Shown: positions 27,995 through 51,396 of the stretch, piece by piece
Layout: each line of letters opens with the position of its first letter
Position numbering within the stretch: the stretch's first letter is position 1
IMG/VR virus record: IMGVR_UViG_3300032236_002285
Location: 310,001 to 374,000 of that record
Length of the DNA stretch: 64,000 bases
Strand: one strand, 5' to 3'
Notes under the pieces: generated by a model
The model's input: only the letters and a program-made list of their open reading frames with translations
Database searches by the model: none
Told to the model about the DNA's origin: nothing
Position numbers and translations under genes: made by a program

Positions 27995-28720
27995 CTATTT
28001 TATGTAATAATATAATTTAAGTTTATCACCCCAAGAAACTTCTACATTAAATTCTTCCTTCATTATTTTACAATCTCTAATATCTCTGGATGATATAAAA
28101 TGACAATTCTTAGGTAGTGACTCATAAATATCTAATACCAATTTATCATCAAAACTAACATCGTTCATAAAAACAATTGTTGCTATAGATGTGTCAAAAT
28201 CTTTAATATCTTTATTAATAAAGAAAACTGAATTATTTTCCGGAAGAATTTGTTGCTTTATATACTTAGCATAGTTATTTCTATGAGTAAGTATTTCAAC
28301 ACCAACTAATGTTTTTATATTAGACATTATAGCGGTGTGTAAAACTAACTTACCACAACCAGAACCAATATCAACAAAAACGTCTTTTTCTTTTGGTTTT
28401 TTATACTTATTGATTTTACTAATTATAGTATCAACACCGGTTCTTAAAATCTCACCATAAACAAAATTATTATCATAATCACCTTTATAAGTAAAATGTT
28501 TATTAATACGGCTGTCTCTTTTAGTGATATTTTCTAGTTTGAACTTTTCTTCTGATGAATATTCATCCCAAGTACCAAGTAATTCACAAATAGCCTTGAT
28601 GCTAAATAAGTTATTCTTATAAAGCTGATCTAATTTAGAATTATCTAATAATGCTTTAAGTTCTTTATTCACCAAATAATCTTTTAATTTTTTCTTTTCT
28701 AATACTTTTTCGCAAATCAT
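27995..28720 (-). CDS. Class I SAM-dependent methyltransferase, DOT1-like
   Basis: VYGEI, VFVDIGSGCGKLV, VGVEI, FMND; ATG 28720 preferred; ends in TAG. Confidence 0.7.
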   Translation of the reverse strand: MICEKVLEKKKLKDYLVNKELKALLDNSKLDQLYKNNLFSIKAICELLGTWDEYSSEEKFKLENITKRDSRINKHFTYKGDYDNNFVYGEILRTGVDTIISKINKYKKPKEKDVFVDIGSGCGKLVLHTAIMSNIKTLVGVEILTHRNNYAKYIKQQILPENNSVFFINKDIKDFDTSIATIVFMNDVSFDDKLVLDIYESLPKNCHFISSRDIRDCKIMKEEFNVEVSWGDKLKLYYYIK

Positions 28721-28827
28721 TAATAATATTAGCAACAGCTGATGAGATAACCATATAGTTGCCACTTCCTCTTGTAGATGCTTTATGAATCTTTTCAGAA
28801 GCCATTAATAACTTATCCATTAGTTCC

Positions 28828-29610
28828 TTACTCATGTGTTATTCTAATATCTGTTTTAACACTCCAGTCTTTTGGTAGGTGCTTACAATCATTATGTTCT
28901 AAAAAGTGTGATCTCCACATTTCTATAAATGTTTGTATATTATCTATCCTAGATATAACAACCTCCCCGTGTGTTTTTCTAAGAAAAGTAGTTTTAGTTT
29001 CAGATATACTTTTAAGACGAACCATTGTCAGTCTTTTGATACCAAAATACTTTTTGATTTCATTTTTAAGTGATTTAATTCTTTTCTTTGGTATATTTGA
29101 AGTATCACCAATAAGAGCCCTGGCTATCTTTATCCACTTGATCATATCACCTTTAACTTCTACTTCTCCGTTGATTGGTGCGTTATATATAGTAGCTAAT
29201 TTTTCTTTTAACTCATCAGCTTTTCTTTCATAAGCATCATGACAATCAGCACATAAAGAAAGAACATCGTGAAAGTTATGTGATTTTAGTTCTGTTGGAA
29301 AATATCTACGGTAGCAATAAGGCACAACATGGTGTCTGGTAAGATATTCTTCATTACCACAGGTTACACACTTGTTACCCATTTCAGATAAACCAAATGA
29401 TTTATTATGATTACCAAGTCCTTTTGGTTCAAAATTTAATTTGACGATTAATGGTGACTCAGAAACTACGGTACCTAAATTCCTGTTAAGATACCAATTA
29501 GCTTTTTTCTCATCACATCTAAACATCAAAATCCCACCCGGAGATAGGACTTGACAATTTCCATAAATCTTACGGTCTTTATCTACACCATATGATTTGT
29601 ATATAGACAT
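28828..29610 (-). CDS. HNH-like nuclease resembling the EXD2 C-terminal domain
   Basis: NCQVLSPGG..MFRC..KKANWYL; CVTCG...RHHVVPYCYR...HDVL.LC..CH. Confidence 0.7.
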   Translation of the reverse strand: MSIYKSYGVDKDRKIYGNCQVLSPGGILMFRCDEKKANWYLNRNLGTVVSESPLIVKLNFEPKGLGNHNKSFGLSEMGNKCVTCGNEEYLTRHHVVPYCYRRYFPTELKSHNFHDVLSLCADCHDAYERKADELKEKLATIYNAPINGEVEVKGDMIKWIKIARALIGDTSNIPKKRIKSLKNEIKKYFGIKRLTMVRLKSISETKTTFLRKTHGEVVISRIDNIQTFIEMWRSHFLEHNDCKHLPKDWSVKTDIRITHE

Positions 29611-29613
29611 TTA

Positions 29614-30162
29614 CTAAACTATTTTATCTATTTGATTCAATTCTAAATCAACTATTGTTTTTCTACCAAAAATCATAACACCAACCTTTACTCTTTGTTC
29701 ATTAACACTTTCAATTGTTCCATTGAAGTTAGTGAATGGTCCATCAATGATTTTAATTTCTTGACCAGCGACAAAATTAGTTTCTGCGATTTCAATAGTG
29801 TCTTTACTAACACCTATCATTCTTTGAACTTCTAAGTCAGATACTTGTTGAACTTGACCACTTTTTGAAGAAAGTAAACCAATTGCGCCATCACAAGCTT
29901 TAACAAAATGTGTTAATTCACCAACAGATGACGTTTCTACAAAAATGTAACCAGGATACATAATTTTTTCTCTGATAACCTTTTTACCACTTTTAACACT
30001 AACGGTTTTCTCCATTGGAACTATAACCTGACCAATTTTACCAGTCAAGGTTCCTTTTAATGATTCTTTAGTTAACTTCTCAGAAACTGATCTTTCACGA
30101 TTGGCTTGAGCTCTTACTATGTACCATTTCATAGTTTTTTGATTTTCCATAATTGTATTCAT
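29614..30162 (-). CDS. nusG: Transcription termination/antitermination factor NusG
   Basis: KWYIV, YPGYIFV, C-terminal KOW IIDGPFTNFNG...KVGVMIFGRKT; ends TAG TAA. Confidence 0.92.
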   Translation of the reverse strand: MNTIMENQKTMKWYIVRAQANRERSVSEKLTKESLKGTLTGKIGQVIVPMEKTVSVKSGKKVIREKIMYPGYIFVETSSVGELTHFVKACDGAIGLLSSKSGQVQQVSDLEVQRMIGVSKDTIEIAETNFVAGQEIKIIDGPFTNFNGTIESVNEQRVKVGVMIFGRKTIVDLELNQIDKIV

Positions 30163-30171
30163 ATTTATTTT

Positions 30172-30567
30172 TTAATTTCCTTTTTCTATTTGTTTGTAAT
30201 ATTTTAGCTCTTCTTTAACAAAATCTAAATGATTATCAATTAGGTAATCTAAATCAAGATTTTTAATTTTAAGCTTTTGTAAGATAAGTTTGTAATCTTT
30301 TTCACTAATATCCGACTTTCCGGATTTCTCTGACTTTGACCAAAACCAACTAGGGTATGGTTTTCTTAACATAAAATAATACCAAGTATCAAATGCTGAT
30401 ACTTTATCTATATTTTTAAGATTCAAAAGTTGAGCTTGCTCTGGATATTTTTTGGCAAAATATCGGTTAAAGATAAAAAAGAACTTCTCTTTATCCTCAT
30501 CCGATATTGTGGACCATTTATCTTTGTTTGTAAATAAAGCATTTGCTACATCTGTTATCTCAGCCAT
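30172..30567 (-). CDS. Hypothetical protein, possibly a T4 gp62-like clamp-loader small subunit
   Basis: F..NR.F, WY..L.RK..W.SK pattern and size; adjacent to RNase H. Confidence 0.35.
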   Translation of the reverse strand: MAEITDVANALFTNKDKWSTISDEDKEKFFFIFNRYFAKKYPEQAQLLNLKNIDKVSAFDTWYYFMLRKPYPSWFWSKSEKSGKSDISEKDYKLILQKLKIKNLDLDYLIDNHLDFVKEELKYYKQIEKGN

Positions 30568-31538
30568 TATTTCCCAATATATTTACTTTCCATTTTATTA
30601 ATAATCTCATCAGGTAAGTTATGTAATCTTAAATCAATTAATCTCATGTTGCCTTTAATATTCTCAACGATAGATTCAATTTGAGTTTTACTTAACTTCT
30701 TTTTTTCACAGATTAAATCGGCTATGTTCTCATATAAGTCTGGGTCGGCTAAGTTTACTTCACCAAACTCTAAAAGATAATCGTCATAAATTGTTTTTGC
30801 GCCTTTTTCACCTATTCCTCTTTTCTTACCATTTTTAGTAACTGACCACACAGAGCCAATATTATCTGAAGTATCACCTGATATTATTTTAACCATTAAT
30901 GCTTCAACTGGATCAATCTCATTAATCTCATATTTGTTAAGAAATCTATCTAATAAAAGAATGAAGTCATTATTATCATTTAGATTAAAGATATCATCAT
31001 TTGGTAGTTTTGAAACTTTATTCAAAAATACCTGATAGTTTCTTGGTATAAATAATTTCTCTTTATTATACATCTCATTAGTCATTATGTTAATAAAAAG
31101 AGGATCTAAACCGTAATTCACAATCTGTTTAATATCGTGGTCGTTTGAAACTATAATTGTTGATCTACCTTCTCTGTTAGCTTTATTAACTAAAAAAGAA
31201 ATCCAATCATCACCTTCAACATGAGGTGCTTCTAATATTTTTATTAGACCTTTCATTGAATCCTTAAATTCACCGTAAGCGTTATAAACAAACTGCCAGT
31301 CAATATCAGAGTCTTTTTTACGAGTAGCTTTGTATGAAGTTGTTAATTGTTTTCTCCAAGATTTTTCCTTGGAATCGGATACAAGATAAACATTAGCAAA
31401 TGGATACCATTTTCTATAATTATTTACCGTATTCTCTAGTGACTTATGTAGTGCACCGAACAATAAATTGTTCTTGTGTAATGTAAAAGTATTTTTGCTT
31501 AAAATATAGTTGCCATCGATCACCAAGTCGCAAATCAT
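30567..31538 (-). CDS. rnh: T4 RNase H / 5'-3' flap exonuclease
   Basis: IDGN, SWRK...YKATR, EGDDWI, SNDHD.KQ, GDTSDNI. Confidence 0.85.
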   Translation of the reverse strand: MICDLVIDGNYILSKNTFTLHKNNLLFGALHKSLENTVNNYRKWYPFANVYLVSDSKEKSWRKQLTTSYKATRKKDSDIDWQFVYNAYGEFKDSMKGLIKILEAPHVEGDDWISFLVNKANREGRSTIIVSNDHDIKQIVNYGLDPLFINIMTNEMYNKEKLFIPRNYQVFLNKVSKLPNDDIFNLNDNNDFILLLDRFLNKYEINEIDPVEALMVKIISGDTSDNIGSVWSVTKNGKKRGIGEKGAKTIYDDYLLEFGEVNLADPDLYENIADLICEKKKLSKTQIESIVENIKGNMRLIDLRLHNLPDEIINKMESKYIGK

Positions 31539-31580
31539 ATTATTTAATTATTTTAATATATATACTAAAAAATACTAATT

Positions 31581-32495
31581 ATGTTGTTAAGTTCTCATGT
31601 CAAAGTTGAAATGAATAGGGGTAACTTAGGTTATTATAATAGAGTAATGAATAGTAAATTTAAAATTGGTGATGAAATTGATGTTCCAATTAAATTAATT
31701 TCAAAAAGTAGTCAAGTTTTAGTTGATGTTTCTTGTGATATATGTAATTCTGAGTCAAAAACAACATATAGAAACTACAATGATTGTTTAAATTATGATT
31801 TTTATTCTTGTAATAAATGTAAGCATATAAAACGCAAAATTACTAATAAATCAAAACATGGAATGGATAATTACCAAAATGTTGATAAAATAAAGAGTAC
31901 AAAATTAGCAAAGTATGGTGATGAAAATTTTACAGGTAGAGAAAAATCAAAAATAACATGTTTGAAGAAATATGGAGAAGACAATGTATCAAAATTAGAT
32001 TTTGTTAAAGATAAAAAAAAGGTAACAAATAATAAAAATTGGGGAGTTGATAATGTTTTTCAATCTGATGAGATAAAAAAAATATCAAAAAGTTCAATGA
32101 TGAATAGATTTGGAGTTGAACATCCTAATCAAAATGTTGAAATTTTCAATAGAGCTCAAACAACTGGTTTTAAAATAAAAAAGTATAAAAATGGTTTTTA
32201 TAGAGGAACATACGAGTTAGACTTTATAAACTACTGTGATAGTAAAAATATAGATGTCATTAATGGTCCATCTATAAAATATGAATTTAATGGCAAAATA
32301 AAAATTTATCACTCAGATTTTTTTATAAAAAGTAAAAATCTAATATGTGAAGTGAAATCGTCATATACATATAATTTTGACAAAGATCTAAATGATGCTA
32401 AAAAATTAGGATCTATAAAAAATGGATATAATTTTATCTTCATAATAGATAAAGATTATAGTGAGTTTGATAAAATAATTTCTAATTCTATTTAA
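31581..32495 (+). mobile_element. Homing-endonuclease-like protein (zinc ribbon, KYG-x-xN repeats, C-terminal PD-(D/E)xK domain)
   Basis: CDIC..CNKC; KYGDEN/KYGEDN/WGVDN/FGVEH repeats; YHSDF..EVKS; inserted antisense within a minus-strand cluster. Confidence 0.65.
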
Positions 32496-32916
32496 GAATA
32501 TCTTTTATTTTTCTATCTCTTTCTAAAATCTTGAACTTTACTTCTAAGTAGTCTTCTATCTCATTTGGTAAAGGAACTTTATTCTTTTTTAATTCATCAT
32601 AAAAAGGTTTACCTAAAATATTAAGTGTGGCTATTGCTATAGCAATATCTGAACTACCATAACCCTCAACTTCAACATCTTCACCTAAAACATGATAAGT
32701 TGTTTTCTGAATAGTATAGTTAGCGGTGCTACCACCATAAACTAAATACTGACCGTTTCCTACTGAAGTTGTGATGTTTGAATTTGTACCAGATATAGTT
32801 AAAGTACCAGATGAGCCAGTTACATATAATGACCCGGTAATTGAAGGTGTTCCAAAGATTGGATTACCTATTGTGCTTGTATGAACTATTTGTCCGCCTA
32901 TGTTTACAAAACCCAT
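32488..32916 (-). CDS. Hypothetical protein with G/T/S-rich N-terminus and C-terminal tag (RDRKIKDILK)
   Basis: ORF track; AAACTTT-N14-TATAAT upstream; ends in TAG. Confidence 0.7.
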   Translation of the reverse strand: MGFVNIGGQIVHTSTIGNPIFGTPSITGSLYVTGSSGTLTISGTNSNITTSVGNGQYLVYGGSTANYTIQKTTYHVLGEDVEVEGYGSSDIAIAIATLNILGKPFYDELKKNKVPLPNEIEDYLEVKFKILERDRKIKDILK

Positions 32917-32946
32917 ATAGGATTATATGAGTATTGTAATAAAAGT

Positions 32947-33492
32947 TTATAATATCTTACTAATTTGAATATGACGATAAAGTCTTTGAAAATCTTCTCT
33001 TACTTCTTCTGAATATTCATAGCTATATTTATTTGCGTAGAAGTCAAATTGTGTTCTCTGTACCATTTTATGTACTTCTTCATAGTTGGATTTGACTTTA
33101 TCAAAACAATCTTCTTTAGTGGTCCACTTAACCATATTATCAATTAAATCAAAGTCTATTTTTCTAAACCCGTTAAAGAAAAAAGATTGAGCATAACTAA
33201 ATAAATAGTGCTTAATCACTTTATCATGATATTCATCCTCATTAACTCCTTTAGGATTAGATAATTCTGGTGTTGTAAAGTAAAACTCAACATCTATCTC
33301 AATTAAGTGCTTAACTAACTTTATTATAGCATTTGGAACTTTATTATCTAAGAAAACATAAACAACATCATTTTCAACAAAGCATATTGGAATATGTTCA
33401 TATTTTTTAAACATAAGAAATTTACCCTTAACCACCCAAGTAGGGTTGTGTAAAGGTCTAAATTTATCAGGTATTAATCTATTTAAGTCCAT
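32947..33492 (-). CDS. Hypothetical protein with C-terminal tag variant (RHIQISKIL)
   Basis: ORF track. Confidence 0.7.
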   Translation of the reverse strand: MDLNRLIPDKFRPLHNPTWVVKGKFLMFKKYEHIPICFVENDVVYVFLDNKVPNAIIKLVKHLIEIDVEFYFTTPELSNPKGVNEDEYHDKVIKHYLFSYAQSFFFNGFRKIDFDLIDNMVKWTTKEDCFDKVKSNYEEVHKMVQRTQFDFYANKYSYEYSEEVREDFQRLYRHIQISKIL

Positions 33493-33808
33493 TTTCTTTT
33501 AATATCTTCAAAAATAATCTTTTATCACCTTCTCTTGTTTCATCACGTCTACCATCTCTCCAATGACATTTACCTTTATTTGGTGAATACTTAACCTTAT
33601 ATCTAGAATCCCATTTTGTTGTTGTGTGTGTTTTAGACCTAAAATTTATCTCTGAGCCAATAAATGATGATACTGATATCTTTTTAGATATAAAACTATT
33701 AGCATCTTCAAACCCTCTCCACCACCTATTGGCATAAGCAAAACGAGTCATTCTACGAATAACTATTCGTTCCTCCATATATCTACGCCATGCTCTATCT
33801 CGGATCAT
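33479..33808 (-). CDS. Basic hypothetical protein
   Basis: ORF track; TATCTTTG on the minus strand at 33813-33820; ends in TAG. Confidence 0.65.
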   Translation of the reverse strand: MIRDRAWRRYMEERIVIRRMTRFAYANRWWRGFEDANSFISKKISVSSFIGSEINFRSKTHTTTKWDSRYKVKYSPNKGKCHWRDGRRDETREGDKRLFLKILKENGLK

Positions 33809-33831
33809 TAGGCAAAGATATGAATTAAATA

Positions 33832-35676
33832 TTACTTTAACAACTCAGTCTTTCTTAAATCAGAACTCTTACCAAACCAGATATCTAAAGAGTTAGCAGA
33901 CATATCATCTTTTGAGATTAAAGTCATTTTAGGACTATTGATAATATCTTGATATTCATCATCAACAAGTGCGGCTAAACCTTTCTTATATTTAATCTCG
34001 TAGTTCTTTAAGTCATTCTTAGCGGCCCAATCATTGTATTCTGTTTGAGAATAGAAAAGAACTTTCTTTTTAGTTTTAGCTTTTGGTACAGCAACTACAA
34101 TAGGAGTTTCAACTTTGTAAATCATTCGTCTTTCAAACATATCAGGCCAGTACTTGTAAAAGAAGTTTAAAAGTAAACCAGCGATTGAATTACCATCAAC
34201 ATCAGCATCTACATAAAAAAGAATACGACCATATCTTAAATCTTTTAATTCAATTCTTTGACCTAATTTTAGACCAATAGCTGCCATTAAATTTACCACT
34301 TCATCATTTTGAACCAATTTTTGATTAGTCATTTCAGATACATTCACAAATTTACCTTTAAGCGCAAAAGCACCCATAGTTTCTGGGACACGATATTTTC
34401 TAAAAGCCGATATAGCAGAATCACCTTCAAATAAACCAATAGAGTACTTCCATCTATCTCTACCTTTAGCATCAATAAGTTTTTCTACTTTTATTTTATC
34501 AAGTTTCTTATTAAGATCTCTTTGTAATTTAGATTCTTCGGCACTTTTCTTTTGTTGAATCCAATCTAAAATAGAGTTAACAATTTCAGATTTAATAATT
34601 GATTGAATTAACTTAGTGGAAACTTCAAATGTAGAACCAAAATCTTTAACCTCTGTAATTAACTTTTCTTTAGTTTGTGAAGAAAAAGATGGATTAATTA
34701 TAGTTGAGTCTAAGAATAAAAACATGTGGTTTTTTAATTCAGATGGTTTAACATCTACTTTATGTTTCTTCATAAAGAATTCTCTTAACTGCGCAATGAT
34801 TTGATTCATTACATAATCAACGTGAGTACCACCATCATAAGTATCAGTAGAGTTAGCAAATGAAACCTGTTGAAATCCATTTTCAGAAAGACCGATGGCT
34901 AAAGACCAAGTTTTATCTTTCTTAGATTCATAGAAGTAGTCTTTAGTATAGTATTTAATATAGTCTTCAAATGATTTGAAATTAATTAATTTACCGTTGA
35001 AATAAACTTTAAGATTAGTATTACAAGCCGCAATATCATAAACTCTTTTCTCAATCATCTTAAAGTGGTCATCATCAATACCAGTTAAGGCAAACTTTTC
35101 AAAATCAACTAAGTAATTAATTTCAGTAAAGCCTTTTGTGGATTTTTTAACCTTAGCAGGAGTTCTTTTTCTCATATTATTAGAGAAAGTTTGAGTAAAG
35201 TGATTAGCACCATCACAAGTAGTTACCGTAAATTCTTTTGAATAGATATTAGTAAGTGTAGAACCTACGCCATTTGTACCAGCGCCGGTTCTTTGTTCAT
35301 CATCGTTAAAGTTAGAACCTGCTTTAAGATTTGAGAATATCATCTCAGGAATCCATTCTTTGTGTTGTGTGTGTTTAACTACAGGAATTCCACCATTATC
35401 CCAGATGGTTATGTAATTTGTGGCTCTATCAACATCTACTTTAACAATGTTTAATTTAGAACCTTTTCTTTTGCTTTCATCAACAGAGTTGGTAACAATC
35501 TCATCAAAAATTTTAAGCAATCCTGGGTTATAGGTTACTTCTTTTTGAGTCATCTTATCTTCTTCAACAATCCATTTAGTAGCTTTATGAGGTTTAATTG
35601 AACCGATATACATACCAGGTCTTAATATAACGTGGTCTATATCATCTAACTTTTTAAACTTTTTATCTACTGACAT
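33832..35676 (-). CDS. Type IIA DNA topoisomerase ATPase/TOPRIM subunit (T4 gp39+gp60-like, GyrB/ParE family)
   Basis: HVILRPGMYIGS, DEIVTNSVDE, GTNGVGS, EGDSA, LKGK, DADVDG, YKKGL. Confidence 0.95.
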   Translation of the reverse strand: MSVDKKFKKLDDIDHVILRPGMYIGSIKPHKATKWIVEEDKMTQKEVTYNPGLLKIFDEIVTNSVDESKRKGSKLNIVKVDVDRATNYITIWDNGGIPVVKHTQHKEWIPEMIFSNLKAGSNFNDDEQRTGAGTNGVGSTLTNIYSKEFTVTTCDGANHFTQTFSNNMRKRTPAKVKKSTKGFTEINYLVDFEKFALTGIDDDHFKMIEKRVYDIAACNTNLKVYFNGKLINFKSFEDYIKYYTKDYFYESKKDKTWSLAIGLSENGFQQVSFANSTDTYDGGTHVDYVMNQIIAQLREFFMKKHKVDVKPSELKNHMFLFLDSTIINPSFSSQTKEKLITEVKDFGSTFEVSTKLIQSIIKSEIVNSILDWIQQKKSAEESKLQRDLNKKLDKIKVEKLIDAKGRDRWKYSIGLFEGDSAISAFRKYRVPETMGAFALKGKFVNVSEMTNQKLVQNDEVVNLMAAIGLKLGQRIELKDLRYGRILFYVDADVDGNSIAGLLLNFFYKYWPDMFERRMIYKVETPIVVAVPKAKTKKKVLFYSQTEYNDWAAKNDLKNYEIKYKKGLAALVDDEYQDIINSPKMTLISKDDMSANSLDIWFGKSSDLRKTELLK

Positions 35677-35846
35677 TCTTTATTTCAAATTTTAATTATA
35701 TATGGTAAAGTTTTGTCTTTGTTTAGATATTTGTTTTAAGTGATATTTTTGCTAAATTTACTTAACATAAAAATAATATACAATAATAATTTGAAAAAAT
35801 AAACATTTTGAGTAAAATACAATTTAATATACTTATACATACATTA

Positions 35847-36788
35847 ATGAAAATTTTATACGGAATACAACTTAATGGAAATGGTCACATAACAAGATCA
35901 TTGGAGTTGATAAGCAAACTAAGACAATATGGCTACTCAGTTGATGTAATTACATCTGGTGGTAACTCAAGTTTGACTCTACCAATAGAAGTTATTAAAA
36001 GCTTCCAAGGCTTCTCTATGTATTTTAGTAAGAATGGTAAAATAGACTGGTTAAAAACTACACTCTCATCAAATATATTTAAAATTATAAGAGATATCAA
36101 TTTTGATTGCCGTGGTTATGACTTAGTTATATCCGATTTTGAACCTATCAGTGCTTACTCAGCTAAAAAATACGGTGTTAAATCAATTGGTATATCAAAT
36201 CAATGCTCATTAATGAATAATAAGTCAATAAAATACTTTTTCTCATGGCAATTTATTAAATACTTTGCTCCTTGTGATTCTTATATACCTTTAGATTACA
36301 AAGGCTATTTTCAACCTATAATATCTCAAGATTTATTAAATAGTAAGAAGTCTGAAGAAGAATTTTATTTAGTCTATTTAGCCGCTTATAGTTTAGAATA
36401 TATTATGTGTGAACTTGAACAATCTGATAAAAAATTCAAAGTTTATAGTAATGAGATTATAAAAGATGGTGTTATAAATAATATAGAGTTTAAAAAACCT
36501 GATAGAAAAAACTTTCAATCTGATTTGCTTAATTGCTCAGGTGTAATAACAGCTTCTGGATTCTCAACAACATCTGAAGCACTTGTGCTAGGTAAAAAAC
36601 TTTGGTCAATTCCAGTTAGAGGTCAGTTTGAACAAATTTGCAATGCTAATAAATTAAATGAGTTAGGTGTTTATACAAAAAAGCTAACATATGATAATCT
36701 AGATAATTGGCTAAATAACTATAAAAAAATAGAATATCACTGGATTAATCCAATAAAAAATATAATTCATAAAATAAATGAAAATTAG
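35847..36788 (+). CDS. GT-B glycosyltransferase (MJ1255/GT28-like)
   Basis: KILYGIQLNGNGHITRS, VISDFEP, ASGFST.SEA..LGK, GQFEQ..NA; ATG 35847; ends in TAG. Confidence 0.85.
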   Translation: MKILYGIQLNGNGHITRSLELISKLRQYGYSVDVITSGGNSSLTLPIEVIKSFQGFSMYFSKNGKIDWLKTTLSSNIFKIIRDINFDCRGYDLVISDFEPISAYSAKKYGVKSIGISNQCSLMNNKSIKYFFSWQFIKYFAPCDSYIPLDYKGYFQPIISQDLLNSKKSEEEFYLVYLAAYSLEYIMCELEQSDKKFKVYSNEIIKDGVINNIEFKKPDRKNFQSDLLNCSGVITASGFSTTSEALVLGKKLWSIPVRGQFEQICNANKLNELGVYTKKLTYDNLDNWLNNYKKIEYHWINPIKNIIHKINEN

Positions 36789-44988: not shown

Positions 44989-45200
44989 ATTAAAGGACCT
45001 ATCGCTGGTGGTAACACTGGAGGAAGTTCGCGACTACAGAACCTAACACGGGAGAATAAGTAAAGAAATTGAAAGTTCGTTTGCACCGAGGAAGTAGCAA
45101 CACATACAGACCTAGAGTGTCGGTTCCTCTATGATGGTCGGGTTGTGGCATAGATAAATGATGGGATAAAACAGGATCGCGGCTACACTTGATTTATATT
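44982..45200 (+). ncRNA. rnpB: Minimal RNase P RNA (type-A-like catalytic domain, strongly reduced S-domain, no P18/P19)
   Basis: P1 44982-95/45188-200; P2 CCTATC/GATGGG; P3 with GTAA loop; P4 AGT(T)CGCGA/TCGCGGCT with bulged U; P5 CTAC/GTAG; P6 GAACC/GGTTC; P15-P17 with GGU; AGATAAATG and ACAG..TCGCGGCTA conserved regions. Confidence 0.85.
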
Positions 45201-50828: not shown

Positions 50829-50859
50829 TTTGCTATTTGAAAAAGTTTTACTATCTTTG
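50829..50859 (+). promoter_or_regulatory. Bacteroidota promoter TTTG-N19-TATCTTTG driving the tRNA
   Basis: Canonical spacing; 10 nt upstream of the tRNA 5' end. Confidence 0.7.
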
Positions 50860-50869
50860 TAAAACAATT

Positions 50870-50949
50870 GCGGGTAGAGTCTAATGCGGCGTGGATGTCG
50901 CGGGCGCCTCTAAAACGTCTGGCATCGGGTTCAAATCCTGCTATCCGCA
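50870..50949 (+). tRNA. Atypical tRNA with CUA anticodon (amber-suppressor type); no encoded CCA
   Basis: Acceptor GCGGGTA(G)/(C)TATCCGC; anticodon loop CTCTAAA on GGGCG/CGTCT stem; T-loop TTCAAAT; discriminator A followed by CTA; non-canonical D region. Confidence 0.75.
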
Positions 50950-50952
50950 CTA

Positions 50953-51396
50953 ATGATAATTAAACGAGACGATGATTTTATGGTTGGCTTATACTGGTTT
51001 TGGGATAAGTATGTTCATTATAAAACTAAAAGTAAGCGAGGTTTGCCAGAAAGATTTGAGTCTCAGTTTAATAAAATGTTAGCAATCTTAGAAGTAAAAT
51101 ATCCACATATGTCAGGCAGATGGAATGGTCAAACCAAAGCAGAGTTTGAAAAGAATTATAAAAGAGTTAAAGACATCGTTGATAAATCAACCGGTGATGA
51201 AGATAAAGCGGTCGCTTTAGCACAAACACAAGCCAACCGAATTACAGATGAATTTAAAGCCATTAATAGAGCAATGGCTGCTAAATCTATGAATCAAGAA
51301 CACATTTTTGAAGTATTCTTTCAAAGAGCTTATGAGTTAGGTTCTGTTAGTAAACAAGAGTATCGTGAATACAAATTAGAAAAGTTAGGTATTTAA
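50953..51396 (+). CDS. Hypothetical protein with tag (REYKLEKLGI)
   Basis: ORF track. Confidence 0.7.
   Translation: MIIKRDDDFMVGLYWFWDKYVHYKTKSKRGLPERFESQFNKMLAILEVKYPHMSGRWNGQTKAEFEKNYKRVKDIVDKSTGDEDKAVALAQTQANRITDEFKAINRAMAAKSMNQEHIFEVFFQRAYELGSVSKQEYREYKLEKLGI

What the first reader, a model, noticed from the sequence alone, without database searches (positions are those of the whole stretch)
50870..50952. Structurally unusual amber (CUA) tRNA in a window that still uses TAG as stop
Seen in sequence: the anticodon loop is CTCTAAA (50908-50914), giving anticodon CUA, with a C-A mismatch at the 31-39 position. The acceptor stem can extend to 8 bp (G50877-C50941), leaving a 4-bp T-stem; this 8/4 geometry is described for some allo-tRNAs. 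The D region folds either as a 4-bp stem with 5 extra nt before the anticodon stem, or as a Sec-like 6-bp/4-nt hairpin (GCGGCG-TGGA-TGTCGC, 50886-50901). The 3' end is A-CTA, not CCA. It has its own Bacteroidota promoter. Long conserved genes here have no in-frame TAG, and at least 7 genes end in TAG (7118, 23915, 27995, 29614, 32488, 33479, 35847). Inference: not genome-wide code-15 recoding in this window. It could mediate partial read-through, serve recoded genes elsewhere in the genome, act as an anti-defence or decoy tRNA, or be decaying.
Basis: partly seen in the sequence, partly recalled or inferred. Interest (0 to 1): 0.72.

Follow-up and report, generated by a model that had tools for sequence, protein, structure and literature searches.

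The report
Rewired amber-suppressor tRNA in huge phage
A 476-kb bacteriophage that uses the ordinary genetic code carries a strongly conserved tRNA gene with its own promoter, an anticodon for the UAG stop codon, and a non-standard fold that routine tRNA finders miss; its purpose is unclear because no phage gene needs it.

Summary
Window 50870-50949(+) is a real, selectively maintained tRNA gene with anticodon CUA. ARAGORN finds nothing and Rfam's tRNA model scores 24.4 bits (threshold 29). Fifteen homologues give decisive covariation: 96.9% of cells paired and 21 of 26 pairs with double changes. The fold has an 8-bp acceptor and 4-bp T stem, a conserved 8-nt connector (NNYCUAAU), a Sec-like 5-6-bp D hairpin, a 3-bp helix between connector and variable region that replaces the normal D stem, and a never-Watson-Crick 31:39 position. 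All 13 close homologues keep CUA and a Bacteroidota-type promoter. The same scaffold carries CCA (Trp) in other phages. The window lies in a 476-kb huge-phage contig (97% complete, 53 other tRNAs, its own GlnRS, GluRS and CCA-adding enzyme). This contig and a complete 635-kb relative use the standard code. They show no TAG-interrupted genes, no backup-stop enrichment, no conserved TAG stops and no release factor. It is therefore not decaying and does not serve recoded genes. Most likely it is an active amber suppressor of unknown amino-acid identity (Gln is the leading guess) whose target is not the phage's own ORFs. Expression and charging remain untested. It is a new variant of known kinds (8/4 tRNAs; phage suppressor tRNAs).

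The parts
50829..50859 (+). Bacteroidota-type promoter: -33 TTTG (50829-50832), 19-nt spacer, -7 box TATCTTTG (50852-50859), ending 10 nt before tRNA position 1
   Evidence: Sequence and pattern scan (8 in window vs 3.8 expected). A TAnnTTTG box lies 9-15 nt upstream of every homologue, including those only about 60% identical.
50870..50949 (+). Amber (CUA) tRNA gene, 80 nt up to discriminator A50949; C50950 may serve as C74
   Evidence: Rfam tRNA 24.4 bits. Own covariance model R1 scores 98 bits, with one strong hit per genome. Covariation.
50870..50877 (+). 5' strand of the 8-bp acceptor stem; pairs with 50941-50948
   Evidence: All 8 pairs are 100% paired and all 8 show double changes. Pair 8-73 types: GC 8, GU 4, UA 2, CG 1.
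50878..50885 (+). 8-nt connector AGUCUAAU (family consensus NNYCUAAU). Nucleotides 50879-50881 (GUC) pair with 50921-50923 (GGC)
   Evidence: C12, A14 and A15 are invariant. The connector-variable helix is paired in 97.8% of cells; pair 10-54 is GC 10, AU 2, UA 2; pair 11-53 is UG 10, CG 4, AU 1. L107 uses AACG/CGUU instead.
50886..50901 (+). D hairpin GCGGCG-UGGA-UGUCGC: 5-6 bp stem with a small loop holding the invariant GG
   Evidence: All 6 pairs show double changes; G24 and G25 are invariant. RNAalifold predicts it independently.
50902..50920 (+). Anticodon arm: 5-bp stem GGGCG/CGUCU, a C:A opposition at 31:39, and the 7-nt loop CUCUAAA. Anticodon CUA is at 50910-50912
   Evidence: The stem covaries. 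UCUAA is invariant in all 13 amber homologues; the 31:39 position is C:A, C:C or A:C.
50921..50925 (+). Short variable region GGCAU; its first 3 nt form the 3' strand of the connector-variable helix
50926..50940 (+). T arm: 4-bp stem CGGG/CCUG and loop UUCAAAU
   Evidence: 100% paired; GGUUCRAnUCC is invariant.
50941..50949 (+). 3' strand of the acceptor stem (50941-50948) and discriminator A (50949)
   Evidence: A73 is present in all amber members; the Trp members have G73.
50953..51396 (+). Conserved 147-aa ORF of unknown function that follows the tRNA in every homologous locus. Here it starts 3-29 nt after the tRNA with no terminator in between, so it is probably co-transcribed
   Evidence: tblastn synteny; no terminator found; no Pfam, PHROG, NCBIfam or Atlas assignment.

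Best explanation
This is a functional phage tRNA gene with an amber anticodon. It is built on a phage-specific non-canonical scaffold, and it most likely works as a UAG suppressor in a phage that otherwise keeps the standard code.

Shown here: the gene is under strong purifying selection. It folds with an 8-bp acceptor stacked on a 4-bp T stem (12 bp, the length EF-Tu needs). An 8-nt connector uses three of its bases to pair with the start of the variable region, in place of a normal D stem. A separate 5-6-bp hairpin presents the GG that normally docks on the T loop. The anticodon loop is CUCUAAA, closed by a never-Watson-Crick 31:39 position. Every close homologue has a Bacteroidota-type promoter.

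Inferred: transcription starts a few nucleotides upstream and runs on into the next ORF. RNase P trims the 5' end. The 3' end is cut after the discriminator or C74, and CCA is completed by the phage's own CCA-adding enzyme. The tRNA is then aminoacylated; Gln, by the phage or host GlnRS through U35, is the leading guess, with Tyr or Lys as alternatives. It then competes with RF1 at UAG.

Neither this phage nor its 635-kb relative has TAG-interrupted genes. So the tRNA's target is not recoded phage ORFs. It more likely gives general low-level amber read-through, acting on host or competitor mRNAs or buffering nonsense mutations. This matches the state proposed as the first step towards TAG recoding in low-GC phages.
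For: Real and constrained:
- Thirteen amber homologues were found with patterns that left the anticodon free, and all have CUA.
- The tRNA stays 94-97.5% identical where flanking proteins are 55-87% identical. The UCUAA core is invariant across a split at about 60% tRNA identity.
- Changes are compensatory: 21 of 26 pairs show double changes, 96.9% of cells pair, and 0 of 500 shuffles reach this. RNAalifold agrees.

Translation-type features are kept: a 12-bp acceptor/T helix, the invariant T loop GGUUCRAnUCC, an invariant GG in the D loop, U33, A37, and a discriminator followed by C. The loop CUCUAAA equals that of E. coli supF, and A36-A37-A38 is the MiaA motif (own knowledge).

The scaffold is used by ordinary decoding tRNAs. 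L004, L116 and L128 carry CCA with A1-U72, G73 and an encoded CCA inside phage tRNA clusters.

Machinery present on the contig: 53 tRNAs, GlnRS and GluRS, and a CCA-adding enzyme family protein. The 3' trailer matches the phage's other tRNAs.

Context: the genome is low-GC and TAG is its rarest stop (35/486 here, 55/688 in the relative). The relatives belong to the Mahaphage clade, which includes the TAG-recoded Lak phages (PMC7162821). Borges et al. describe suppressor acquisition by standard-code relatives and predicted undetected non-canonical suppressors (10.1101/2021.08.26.457843).
Against: - There is no direct evidence of transcription, CCA addition, charging or suppression. The only RNA runs found cover neighbouring coding DNA of relatives, not the tRNA. 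The GlnRS-tRNA complex job was not folded.
- No genomic footprint of suppression was found. There is no backup-stop enrichment behind TAG (p = 0.52). TAG stops are not conserved between orthologues (2 vs 0.8 expected). There are no in-frame TAGs and no phage RF2 of the kind Lak phages have.
- The acceptor identity (G1-C72, C2-G71, A73) does not fit E. coli GlnRS rules.
- The conserved 31:39 mismatch and the rewired core might impair ribosomal function.
- Long-term conservation cannot be explained by 'pre-adaptation' alone, so the selective benefit remains unidentified.
Confidence: 0.58

Rival explanations
1. It is a non-translating tRNA-like RNA. It could be a decoy or sponge for a host tRNA-targeting defence nuclease or tRNA-binding factor. 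It could also be a processing or stability element at the 5' end of the operon that begins with the conserved 147-aa ORF.
For: The tRNA always lies directly upstream of the same ORF, with no terminator. The core is rewired and the 31:39 pair is always broken. No footprint of suppression appears on phage genes. Mukai et al. found irregular 8/4 tRNAs that were inactive in translation (PMC5389517).
Against: A processing signal would not need an invariant U33-CUA-A37 while neighbouring loop positions vary. The same scaffold carries a normal Trp anticodon with matching Trp identity elements and an encoded CCA, which argues that the scaffold decodes. No known anticodon nuclease targets a CUA tRNA (own knowledge). 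Insertions of 65-800 nt separate the tRNA from the ORF in many relatives.
Confidence: 0.2
2. It decodes in-frame TAG codons in a recoded (code 15) set of phage genes, for example late or lysis genes, as in Lak and crAss-like phages.
For: That is the usual role of phage CUA tRNAs (PMC6784885; 10.1101/2021.08.26.457843). The clade includes the Lak phages (PMC7162821).
Against: ORF coverage is 0.835 under code 11 and 0.842 under code 15, and no 20-kb bin gains. Reading TAG as sense adds only 2 spurious stretches, the same number as the TGA control, and both lie in tRNA clusters. The contig is rated 97% complete. The complete 635-kb relative behaves the same way. TAG ends 35 long ORFs.
Confidence: 0.05
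3. It is a decaying tRNA pseudogene or a chance tRNA-like sequence.
For: ARAGORN does not call it. It falls below Rfam's threshold. The MFE is not better than shuffles.
Against: Compensatory substitutions occur in every helix. It is conserved far more than its neighbours. Its promoter is conserved. There is exactly one copy per genome, at a syntenic place, in phages only about 70% identical.
Confidence: 0.02
4. It is a special-purpose tRNA of the Sec, Pyl or allo-tRNA(Ser) type that inserts a non-standard or mismatched residue at UAG.
For: 8/4 geometry, a long D stem with a small loop, and a quasi-6-layer anticodon stem. L002's best Rfam hit is tRNA-Sec (28.5 bits). ARAGORN's intron mode labels it 'Pyl(cta)'.
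Against: There is no long variable arm, which SerRS needs. It has A73 rather than G/U73. The acceptor branch is 12 bp, not 13. The score is far below the tRNA-Sec threshold of 47. It has GG and a T-loop consensus that tRNAPyl lacks, and 8 nt rather than 1 nt between acceptor and D stem. There is no PylRS; the only hit is 36.6 bits against a cut-off of 178, on a truncated HisRS-like ORF.
Confidence: 0.03

Closest known systems
8/4 tRNAs of Mukai et al. 2017 (allo-tRNAs; phage 8/4 tRNA-Ser and tRNA-His; 'irregular' 8/4 tRNAs with an extra loop between acceptor and D stem) - PMC5389517, PMC7609411
   Same: A 12-bp acceptor branch split 8/4. A tRNA-Sec-like D arm with a long stem and small loop. 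Occurrence in phages. Some are nonsense suppressors. Standard finders miss them.
   Different: This family has no long variable arm (5-6 nt only) and A73 rather than G/U73. It has a conserved 8-nt connector NNYCUAAU that pairs with the variable region in place of a D stem. Natural anticodons are CUA (amber) and CCA (Trp), neither reported for the 8/4 classes in that paper. The hosts are Bacteroidota-type huge phages.
Suppressor tRNAs of stop-codon-recoded phages (Lak megaphages, crAss-like phages; code 15) - PMC6784885, 10.1101/2021.08.26.457843
   Same: A phage-encoded CUA tRNA in a low-GC phage of Bacteroidota. The clade is related to Lak. TAG is the rarest stop.
   Different: The genome is not recoded, has no in-frame TAG, and has no phage RF2. 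The scaffold is non-canonical. The nearest published analogue is the single standard-code Agate phage that acquired a TGA suppressor.
Classical bacterial amber suppressors (E. coli supF tRNA-Tyr CUA, supE tRNA-Gln CUA, su7 tRNA-Trp CUA charged with Gln) - own knowledge
   Same: The anticodon loop CUCUAAA is identical to that of supF. It appears to derive from a Trp-type scaffold by C35 to U, as su7 does. U35 is the main GlnRS determinant.
   Different: Those are single-mutation variants of canonical 7/5 tRNAs selected in the laboratory. This one is a naturally conserved gene with a rewired core and changed acceptor identity (G1-C72, A73).
Bacterial tRNA-Sec (Rfam RF01852)
   Same: An 8-bp acceptor stem, a 6-bp D stem with 4-nt loop, and an extended anticodon stem.
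   Different: The acceptor branch is 12 bp (8/4), not 13 bp (8/5). There is no long variable arm. The anticodon is CUA, not UCA. The score is 28.5 bits against a threshold of 47.

Membership tests
Canonical tRNA (Rfam RF00005 / ARAGORN cloverleaf) | Score at or above the family threshold; detection by a standard finder | tested here: not met
   24.4 bits against a gathering score of 29. ARAGORN gives no call at default, and only inconsistent calls at 80% thresholds.
Canonical tRNA (Rfam RF00005 / ARAGORN cloverleaf) | 7-bp acceptor plus 5-bp T stem; 4-bp D stem 10-13/22-25 two nucleotides after the acceptor | tested here: not met
   Pair 8-73 holds in 15/15, while 49-65 holds in 3/12. An 8-nt connector is present. 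The candidate 4-bp D stem UCUA/UGGA is not conserved in L002/L003.
Canonical tRNA (Rfam RF00005 / ARAGORN cloverleaf) | T-loop UUCRAnY, GG in the D loop, U33, purine 37, discriminator | tested here: met
   These columns are invariant in alignments A1 and A3.
allo-tRNA (Mukai 2017) | 12-bp acceptor branch in 8/4 or 9/3 configuration | tested here: met
   8/4 by covariation.
allo-tRNA (Mukai 2017) | Long variable arm and G73/U73 (SerRS identity) | tested here: not met
   The variable region is 5-6 nt and the discriminator is A in all amber members.
allo-tRNA (Mukai 2017) | tRNA-Sec-like D arm (long stem, tetraloop) | tested here: met
   A 5-6-bp stem with a 3-6-nt loop, all pairs covarying.
tRNA-Sec | 13-bp acceptor branch, UCA anticodon, long variable arm, Rfam RF01852 threshold | tested here: not met
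   12 bp, CUA, short variable region. Best score 28.5 bits against 47, on L002.
tRNA-Pyl system | CUA anticodon | tested here: met
tRNA-Pyl system | PylRS encoded alongside; tRNA lacks G18G19 and the T-loop consensus; 1 nt between acceptor and D stem; 3-nt variable loop | tested here: not met
   TIGR02367 gives only 36.6 bits against a cut-off of 178, on a truncated HisRS-like ORF. GG and UUCRA are present, the connector is 8 nt, and the variable region is 5-6 nt.
Phage recoding module (code 15 suppressor tRNA) | Phage-encoded tRNA with CUA anticodon | tested here: met
Phage recoding module (code 15 suppressor tRNA) | In-frame TAG codons in phage genes (higher coding density under code 15) | tested here: not met
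   own genome; 635-kb relative.
Phage recoding module (code 15 suppressor tRNA) | Accessory factors such as phage RF2 | tested here: not met
   No RF-1 domain (PF00472) on the contig, while controls were positive.
Functional amber suppressor (any origin) | Transcribed, CCA-tailed, aminoacylated, and reads UAG on the ribosome | not testable with these tools
   RNA runs held nothing on the tRNA. The complex prediction was not folded.

The most novel reading that the evidence does not exclude
The rewired core (a connector-variable helix replacing the D stem, a free-standing D hairpin, an 8/4 branch, and an open 31:39 position) may be a functional device rather than a neutral oddity. It could make these phage tRNAs orthogonal to host enzymes and defences, so that only a phage-controlled pathway charges them. 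It could also loosen decoding, as the D-arm Hirsh mutation does in tRNA-Trp. In that case the CCA form would read UGA as well as UGG, and the CUA form would give efficient read-through. The phage would then hold a self-contained, switchable stop-codon read-through module, used against the host or as the seed of recoding.
Probability: 0.12. Interest if true: 0.85.

Novelty: new variant of a known kind. Interest (0 to 1): 0.62.

Why it matters
It shows that a whole clade of standard-code huge phages keeps an amber-anticodon tRNA under selection for a long time. A pure 'stepping stone to recoding' view does not predict that. It therefore points to a present-day use of stop-codon read-through during infection.

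It adds a new natural tRNA architecture: 8/4 with a short variable region, and a connector-variable helix in place of the D stem. The architecture is used for both Trp and amber anticodons, and ARAGORN and Rfam thresholds miss it. Surveys that report suppressor tRNAs in only 35-40% of recoded phages may be missing tRNAs of this kind.

A naturally evolved, structurally divergent amber suppressor is also a candidate orthogonal tRNA chassis for genetic-code expansion.

Tried and rejected
- Single-sequence folding. The MFE structure pairs 10-13 with 33-36 and destroys the anticodon stem. Its z-score is -1.27, and that pairing is not conserved in L002. Rejected.
- ARAGORN relaxed readings: Ala(GGC) with two stem mismatches, and 'Pyl(CTA)' with a 6-nt intron. 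Both are rejected by covariation.
- The 7/5 geometry fails, with the 49-65 pair present in only 3 of 12.
- A covariance-model local hit at genome 218961-219024 first looked like a second scaffold member. On reading, it is a roughly canonical 7/5 Trp(CCA) tRNA that ARAGORN missed.
- In-frame TAG search. The best candidates were an adjacent gene starting one codon after the TAG, and a low-complexity repeat at the contig end.
- Backup-stop test and TAG-stop conservation between orthologues: both negative.
- Expression. Two metatranscriptomes hold only conserved coding parts from relatives.
- GlnRS-tRNA complex: not folded by the tool, so it gives no evidence.
- Neighbour proteins: no family in PHROGs, Pfam, NCBIfam or the Atlas.
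- Link to Lak phages. blastn with the tRNA, and tblastn with the neighbour ORF or GlnRS, reached no Lak record. Pattern scans of 2.9 M viral contigs found CUA members only in environmental relatives.
- Ancestry by similarity to the phage's own tRNAs is inconclusive; Gly(UCC) shares the acceptor and a tRNA-Gln shares most of the anticodon arm.
- Recoding in phages that carry the Trp form or canonical amber relatives: no clear signal, and the test is noisy at high GC.
- Pattern hits L007, L016 and L048 are chance matches, and L008 is only a weak 20-bit tRNA-like.

Full report
WHAT THE WINDOW IS. The window is bases 310001-374000 of a single 476,236-bp contig. The contig has 29.9% GC and 53 ARAGORN tRNAs arranged in clusters. 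It is held as an IMG/VR virus record rated 97% complete by CheckV. Its nearest deposited relatives are two uncultured huge phages, LR745206 (634,780 bp) and LR756502 (642,428 bp), at about 71% nucleotide identity around the finding. Phages of more than 634 kb from that study belong to the 'Mahaphage' clade. They are predicted to infect Bacteroidetes, and the clade also contains the TAG-recoded Lak phages (PMC7162821). The finding is therefore a tRNA-like gene of a huge phage, not of a cellular genome.

Comparative data settle the matter. An exact-match scan found a copy in another viral contig with four differences, two of them compensatory. The two megaphage relatives carry a diverged copy at the syntenic place. 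I then scanned viral, metagenome and genome collections with a pattern that left the anticodon stem-loop unconstrained. Thirteen close homologues came back, and every one has CUA.

On a MAFFT alignment of 12 distinct sequences, 97.4% of cells pair and 17 pairs show double changes. RNAalifold independently returns the same helices. On 15 scaffold members aligned to a covariance model, 96.9% of cells pair and 21 of 26 pairs show double changes. No shuffle out of 500 reaches this, and sliding the partners drops pairing to about 40%.

ANATOMY. The numbering here counts 50870 as position 1; pairs quoted as 8-73 and 10-54 use alignment columns, which run one higher 3' of the variable region.
- Acceptor stem: 8 bp (1-8 with 72-79). 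The eighth pair is G-C, G-U, U-A or C-G and is present in 15/15 sequences. The canonical 49-65 pair would form in only 3/12. The 8/4 geometry is therefore real.
- Connector: 8 nt, NNYCUAAU, with C12, A14 and A15 invariant.
- Connector-variable helix: connector positions 10-12 pair with the first three nucleotides of the variable region. Pair 10-54 is G-C in 10 sequences, A-U in 2 and U-A in 2. Pair 11-53 is U-G in 10, C-G in 4 and A-U in 1. Overall 97.8% of cells pair. The divergent member L107 uses AACG/CGUU instead. This helix takes the topological place of the D stem, so the core is two nested three-way junctions rather than a four-way cloverleaf. Support for it is moderate, because it is only three pairs and one of them is invariant.
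- D hairpin: a 5-6-bp stem whose sequence differs completely between lineages yet always pairs. It carries an invariant GG in a 3-6-nt loop.
- Anticodon arm: a 5-bp stem follows the hairpin directly. Position 31:39 is C:A, C:C or A:C in the amber members and is never a Watson-Crick pair. The loop is YUCUAAM.
- The variable region is 5-6 nt. The T stem is 4 bp with loop UUCRAnU. The discriminator is A.
- 3' trailer: C-U-A-A. Nearly all tRNAs of this phage end in this way, and the phage encodes a CCA-adding-enzyme family protein. The missing CCA is therefore unremarkable.

PROMOTER AND CONTEXT. TTTG-19 nt-TATCTTTG lies at 50829-50859. As a bare motif it occurs only about twice as often as chance in the window. 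However, a TAnnTTTG box sits 9-15 nt upstream of every homologue, including those only about 60% identical. No terminator follows the tRNA. In every locus the next conserved gene is the same 147-aa ORF of unknown function, although insertions of 65-800 nt occur in some relatives. The upstream side is more variable. The neighbouring proteins could not be assigned to any family.

CONSTRAINT. Within the close group the tRNA stays 94-97.5% identical while the flanking proteins fall to 55-87% amino-acid identity. Across the deep split (about 60% tRNA identity) the UCUAA core is unchanged, whereas loop positions 31, 32, 38 and 39 vary. This excludes a decaying gene.

THE SCAFFOLD IS A FAMILY. Covariance model R1 finds exactly one strong hit per genome: 98 bits here, and 84-97 bits in four other records. 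Ordinary tRNAs score below 38 bits. A looser scan of viral contigs, filtered with R1, found further members. L004, L116 and L128 have anticodon CCA, A1-U72, G73 and an encoded CCA, and they lie inside tRNA clusters, so they are tRNA-Trp. L107, from a 462-kb contig, has UUU. The amber form therefore looks like a derivative of a phage tRNA-Trp scaffold (CCA to CUA is one change, C35 to U), with altered acceptor identity (G1-C72, A73).

Canonical 72-nt amber tRNAs with the same G1-C2-G3, A73 and CUCUAAA signature occur next to tRNA-Trp in two GC-rich phage contigs. None of the 185,579 species-representative bacterial genomes gave a true match.

GENETIC CODE. ORF coverage of the contig is 0.835 under code 11, 0.842 under code 15 and 0.844 under code 4, and no 20-kb bin gains appreciably. 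Reading TAG as sense creates only two new coding stretches of at least 90 nt. Both lie in tRNA clusters, and the TGA control gives the same number. The best 'TAG-interrupted' candidates are an adjacent gene that starts one codon after the stop, and a terminal low-complexity repeat.

Stops among ORFs of at least 100 aa are TAA 400, TGA 51 and TAG 35. The complete 635-kb relative gives 0.795, 0.809 and 0.807 coverage, with TAA 509, TGA 124 and TAG 55. Both genomes therefore use the standard code, with TAG as the rarest stop.

There is no footprint of suppression on phage genes. The distance to the next non-TAG stop is no shorter after TAG than after other stops (pooled p = 0.52). TAG is not retained between orthologues (2 observed vs 0.8 expected, p = 0.19), whereas TGA is (13 vs 5). 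There is no release-factor gene.

WHO MIGHT CHARGE IT. The contig encodes a GlnRS (glnS equivalog, 668 bits) immediately downstream of three tRNA-Gln genes, and also a GluRS. The GlnRS is conserved in both relatives. There is no TrpRS or TyrRS and no PylRS.

From established E. coli work (own knowledge), U35 is the main GlnRS determinant, and tRNA-Trp(CUA) and tRNA-Gln(CUA) are glutaminylated. Phage TAG reassignments are to Gln. That makes Gln the leading guess. However, G1-C72 with A73 fits Tyr or Lys rules better than E. coli Gln rules, although the phage's own tRNA-Gln genes also have A73. The amino-acid identity is therefore open. A complex prediction was not folded by the tool.

EXPRESSION. 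Only two metatranscriptomes share words with the region. They cover coding parts from relatives at 90-95% identity and nothing on the tRNA. Expression is untested.

INTERPRETATION. Shown: a conserved, promoter-equipped, single-copy gene for an 8/4 tRNA with anticodon CUA, in phages that use the standard code. Inferred: it is processed, CCA-tailed, charged, and competes with RF1 at UAG. Because no phage ORF requires it, its benefit must lie elsewhere. The candidates are read-through on host or competitor messages, buffering of amber mutations, or a role not tied to decoding.

The situation matches the intermediate state proposed by Borges et al.: low GC, rare TAG, and a suppressor acquired before recoding. 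It also matches their prediction that non-canonical suppressors escape detection. But conservation across such divergence calls for a present function that remains unidentified. I put 0.9 on 'real constrained tRNA gene with this fold', about 0.6 on 'decodes UAG in translation', and about 0.35 on 'Gln'.

COMPARISON WITH KNOWN KINDS. 8/4 tRNAs with Sec-like D arms are known. They include allo-tRNAs, phage tRNA-Ser and tRNA-His, and irregular forms with an extra loop after the acceptor stem (PMC5389517, PMC7609411). This family fails the allo-tRNA definition, since it has no long V arm and carries A73. Neither Trp nor natural amber versions are mentioned in that paper. It also fails tRNA-Sec, tRNA-Pyl and canonical tRNA membership on tested features (see the membership table). 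It works like a classical amber suppressor and sits in the ecological setting of phage recoding modules, but the recoding is absent. Verdict: a new variant of known kinds.

Noticed in passing
window 44990-45195 (+); homologues L002 about 232-384 and L003 286-490: A conserved structured RNA of about 200 nt lies in an intergenic gap. It contains GGAGGAAGUUCG and ACAGGAUCGCGGCUAC, which resemble the two P4-forming conserved blocks of RNase P RNA, and these blocks pair with each other. With only 3 copies, 18 of 43 predicted pairs show double changes. Rfam gives no hit in the window and only a sub-threshold RNaseP_arch hit on L003 (32.4 bits against 84). It may be a minimal phage-encoded RNase P-like RNA.
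   Followed up: partly
L021 2412-2499 (genome 219872-219959), L022 2052-2138 (genome 231626-231712), and others outside the window: Ten tRNAs with class-I identities (Lys x3, Glu, Ile, Asn, Thr, Met x2, Gln) carry long variable-arm stem-loops (83-88 nt). Each sits beside a normal-length isoacceptor. The 635-kb relative has seven (Lys x3, Arg, Asn, Gln, Pro). Long V arms are normally limited to Leu, Ser and Tyr in bacteria.
   Followed up: partly
L020 1501-1580 (genome 233380-233459); L021 about 1504-1568 (genome 218964-219028): Two more tRNA-like genes that ARAGORN misses: a Gly(UCC) tRNA with an enlarged D loop of about 18 nt, and a compact Trp(CCA) tRNA with mismatches, just upstream of the normal tRNA-Trp. 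ARAGORN also reports two tRNAs with 4-nt and 2-nt 'anticodons'.
   Followed up: partly
L081 1396-3057 (genome 272250-273911); L082 1342-2967 (genome 262861-264486); L152 (genome about 378.8 kb); L155 1447-2079 (genome 220433-221065): Phage-encoded translation genes. GlnRS lies directly after three tRNA-Gln genes. There is also a GluRS, a CCA-adding-enzyme family protein, and a 210-aa truncated HisRS-like core (PF13393 positions 6-132 of 308) inside the Lys/Arg/Ser tRNA cluster.
   Followed up: partly
window 27995-36788: TAG-terminated genes are clustered locally. Five ORFs of 109-313 aa end in TAG within 9 kb, and seven of the genome's 35 TAG-terminated long ORFs lie within 15 kb. None occurs in the same-strand gene block that holds the tRNA.
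   Followed up: no
whole genome vs W01 (LR745206): TGA stop codons are conserved between orthologues more than chance predicts (13 observed vs 5 expected, p = 1.6e-4), while TAG stops are not.
   Followed up: no
genome 1-1400 and 460001-476236 (outside the window): The contig start carries a low-complexity tandem repeat that stays open for more than 450 codons in one frame. The last 16 kb has only 0.37 ORF coverage under code 11, rising to 0.72 if TAA is read as sense, which is probably an AT-richness artefact.
   Followed up: no
L184 1464-1613 (-); L162 630-863 (-): Two GC-rich (62%) phage contigs carry a canonical 72-nt amber (CUA) tRNA immediately next to a tRNA-Trp(CCA). The loci show no clear TAG recoding.
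   Followed up: partly
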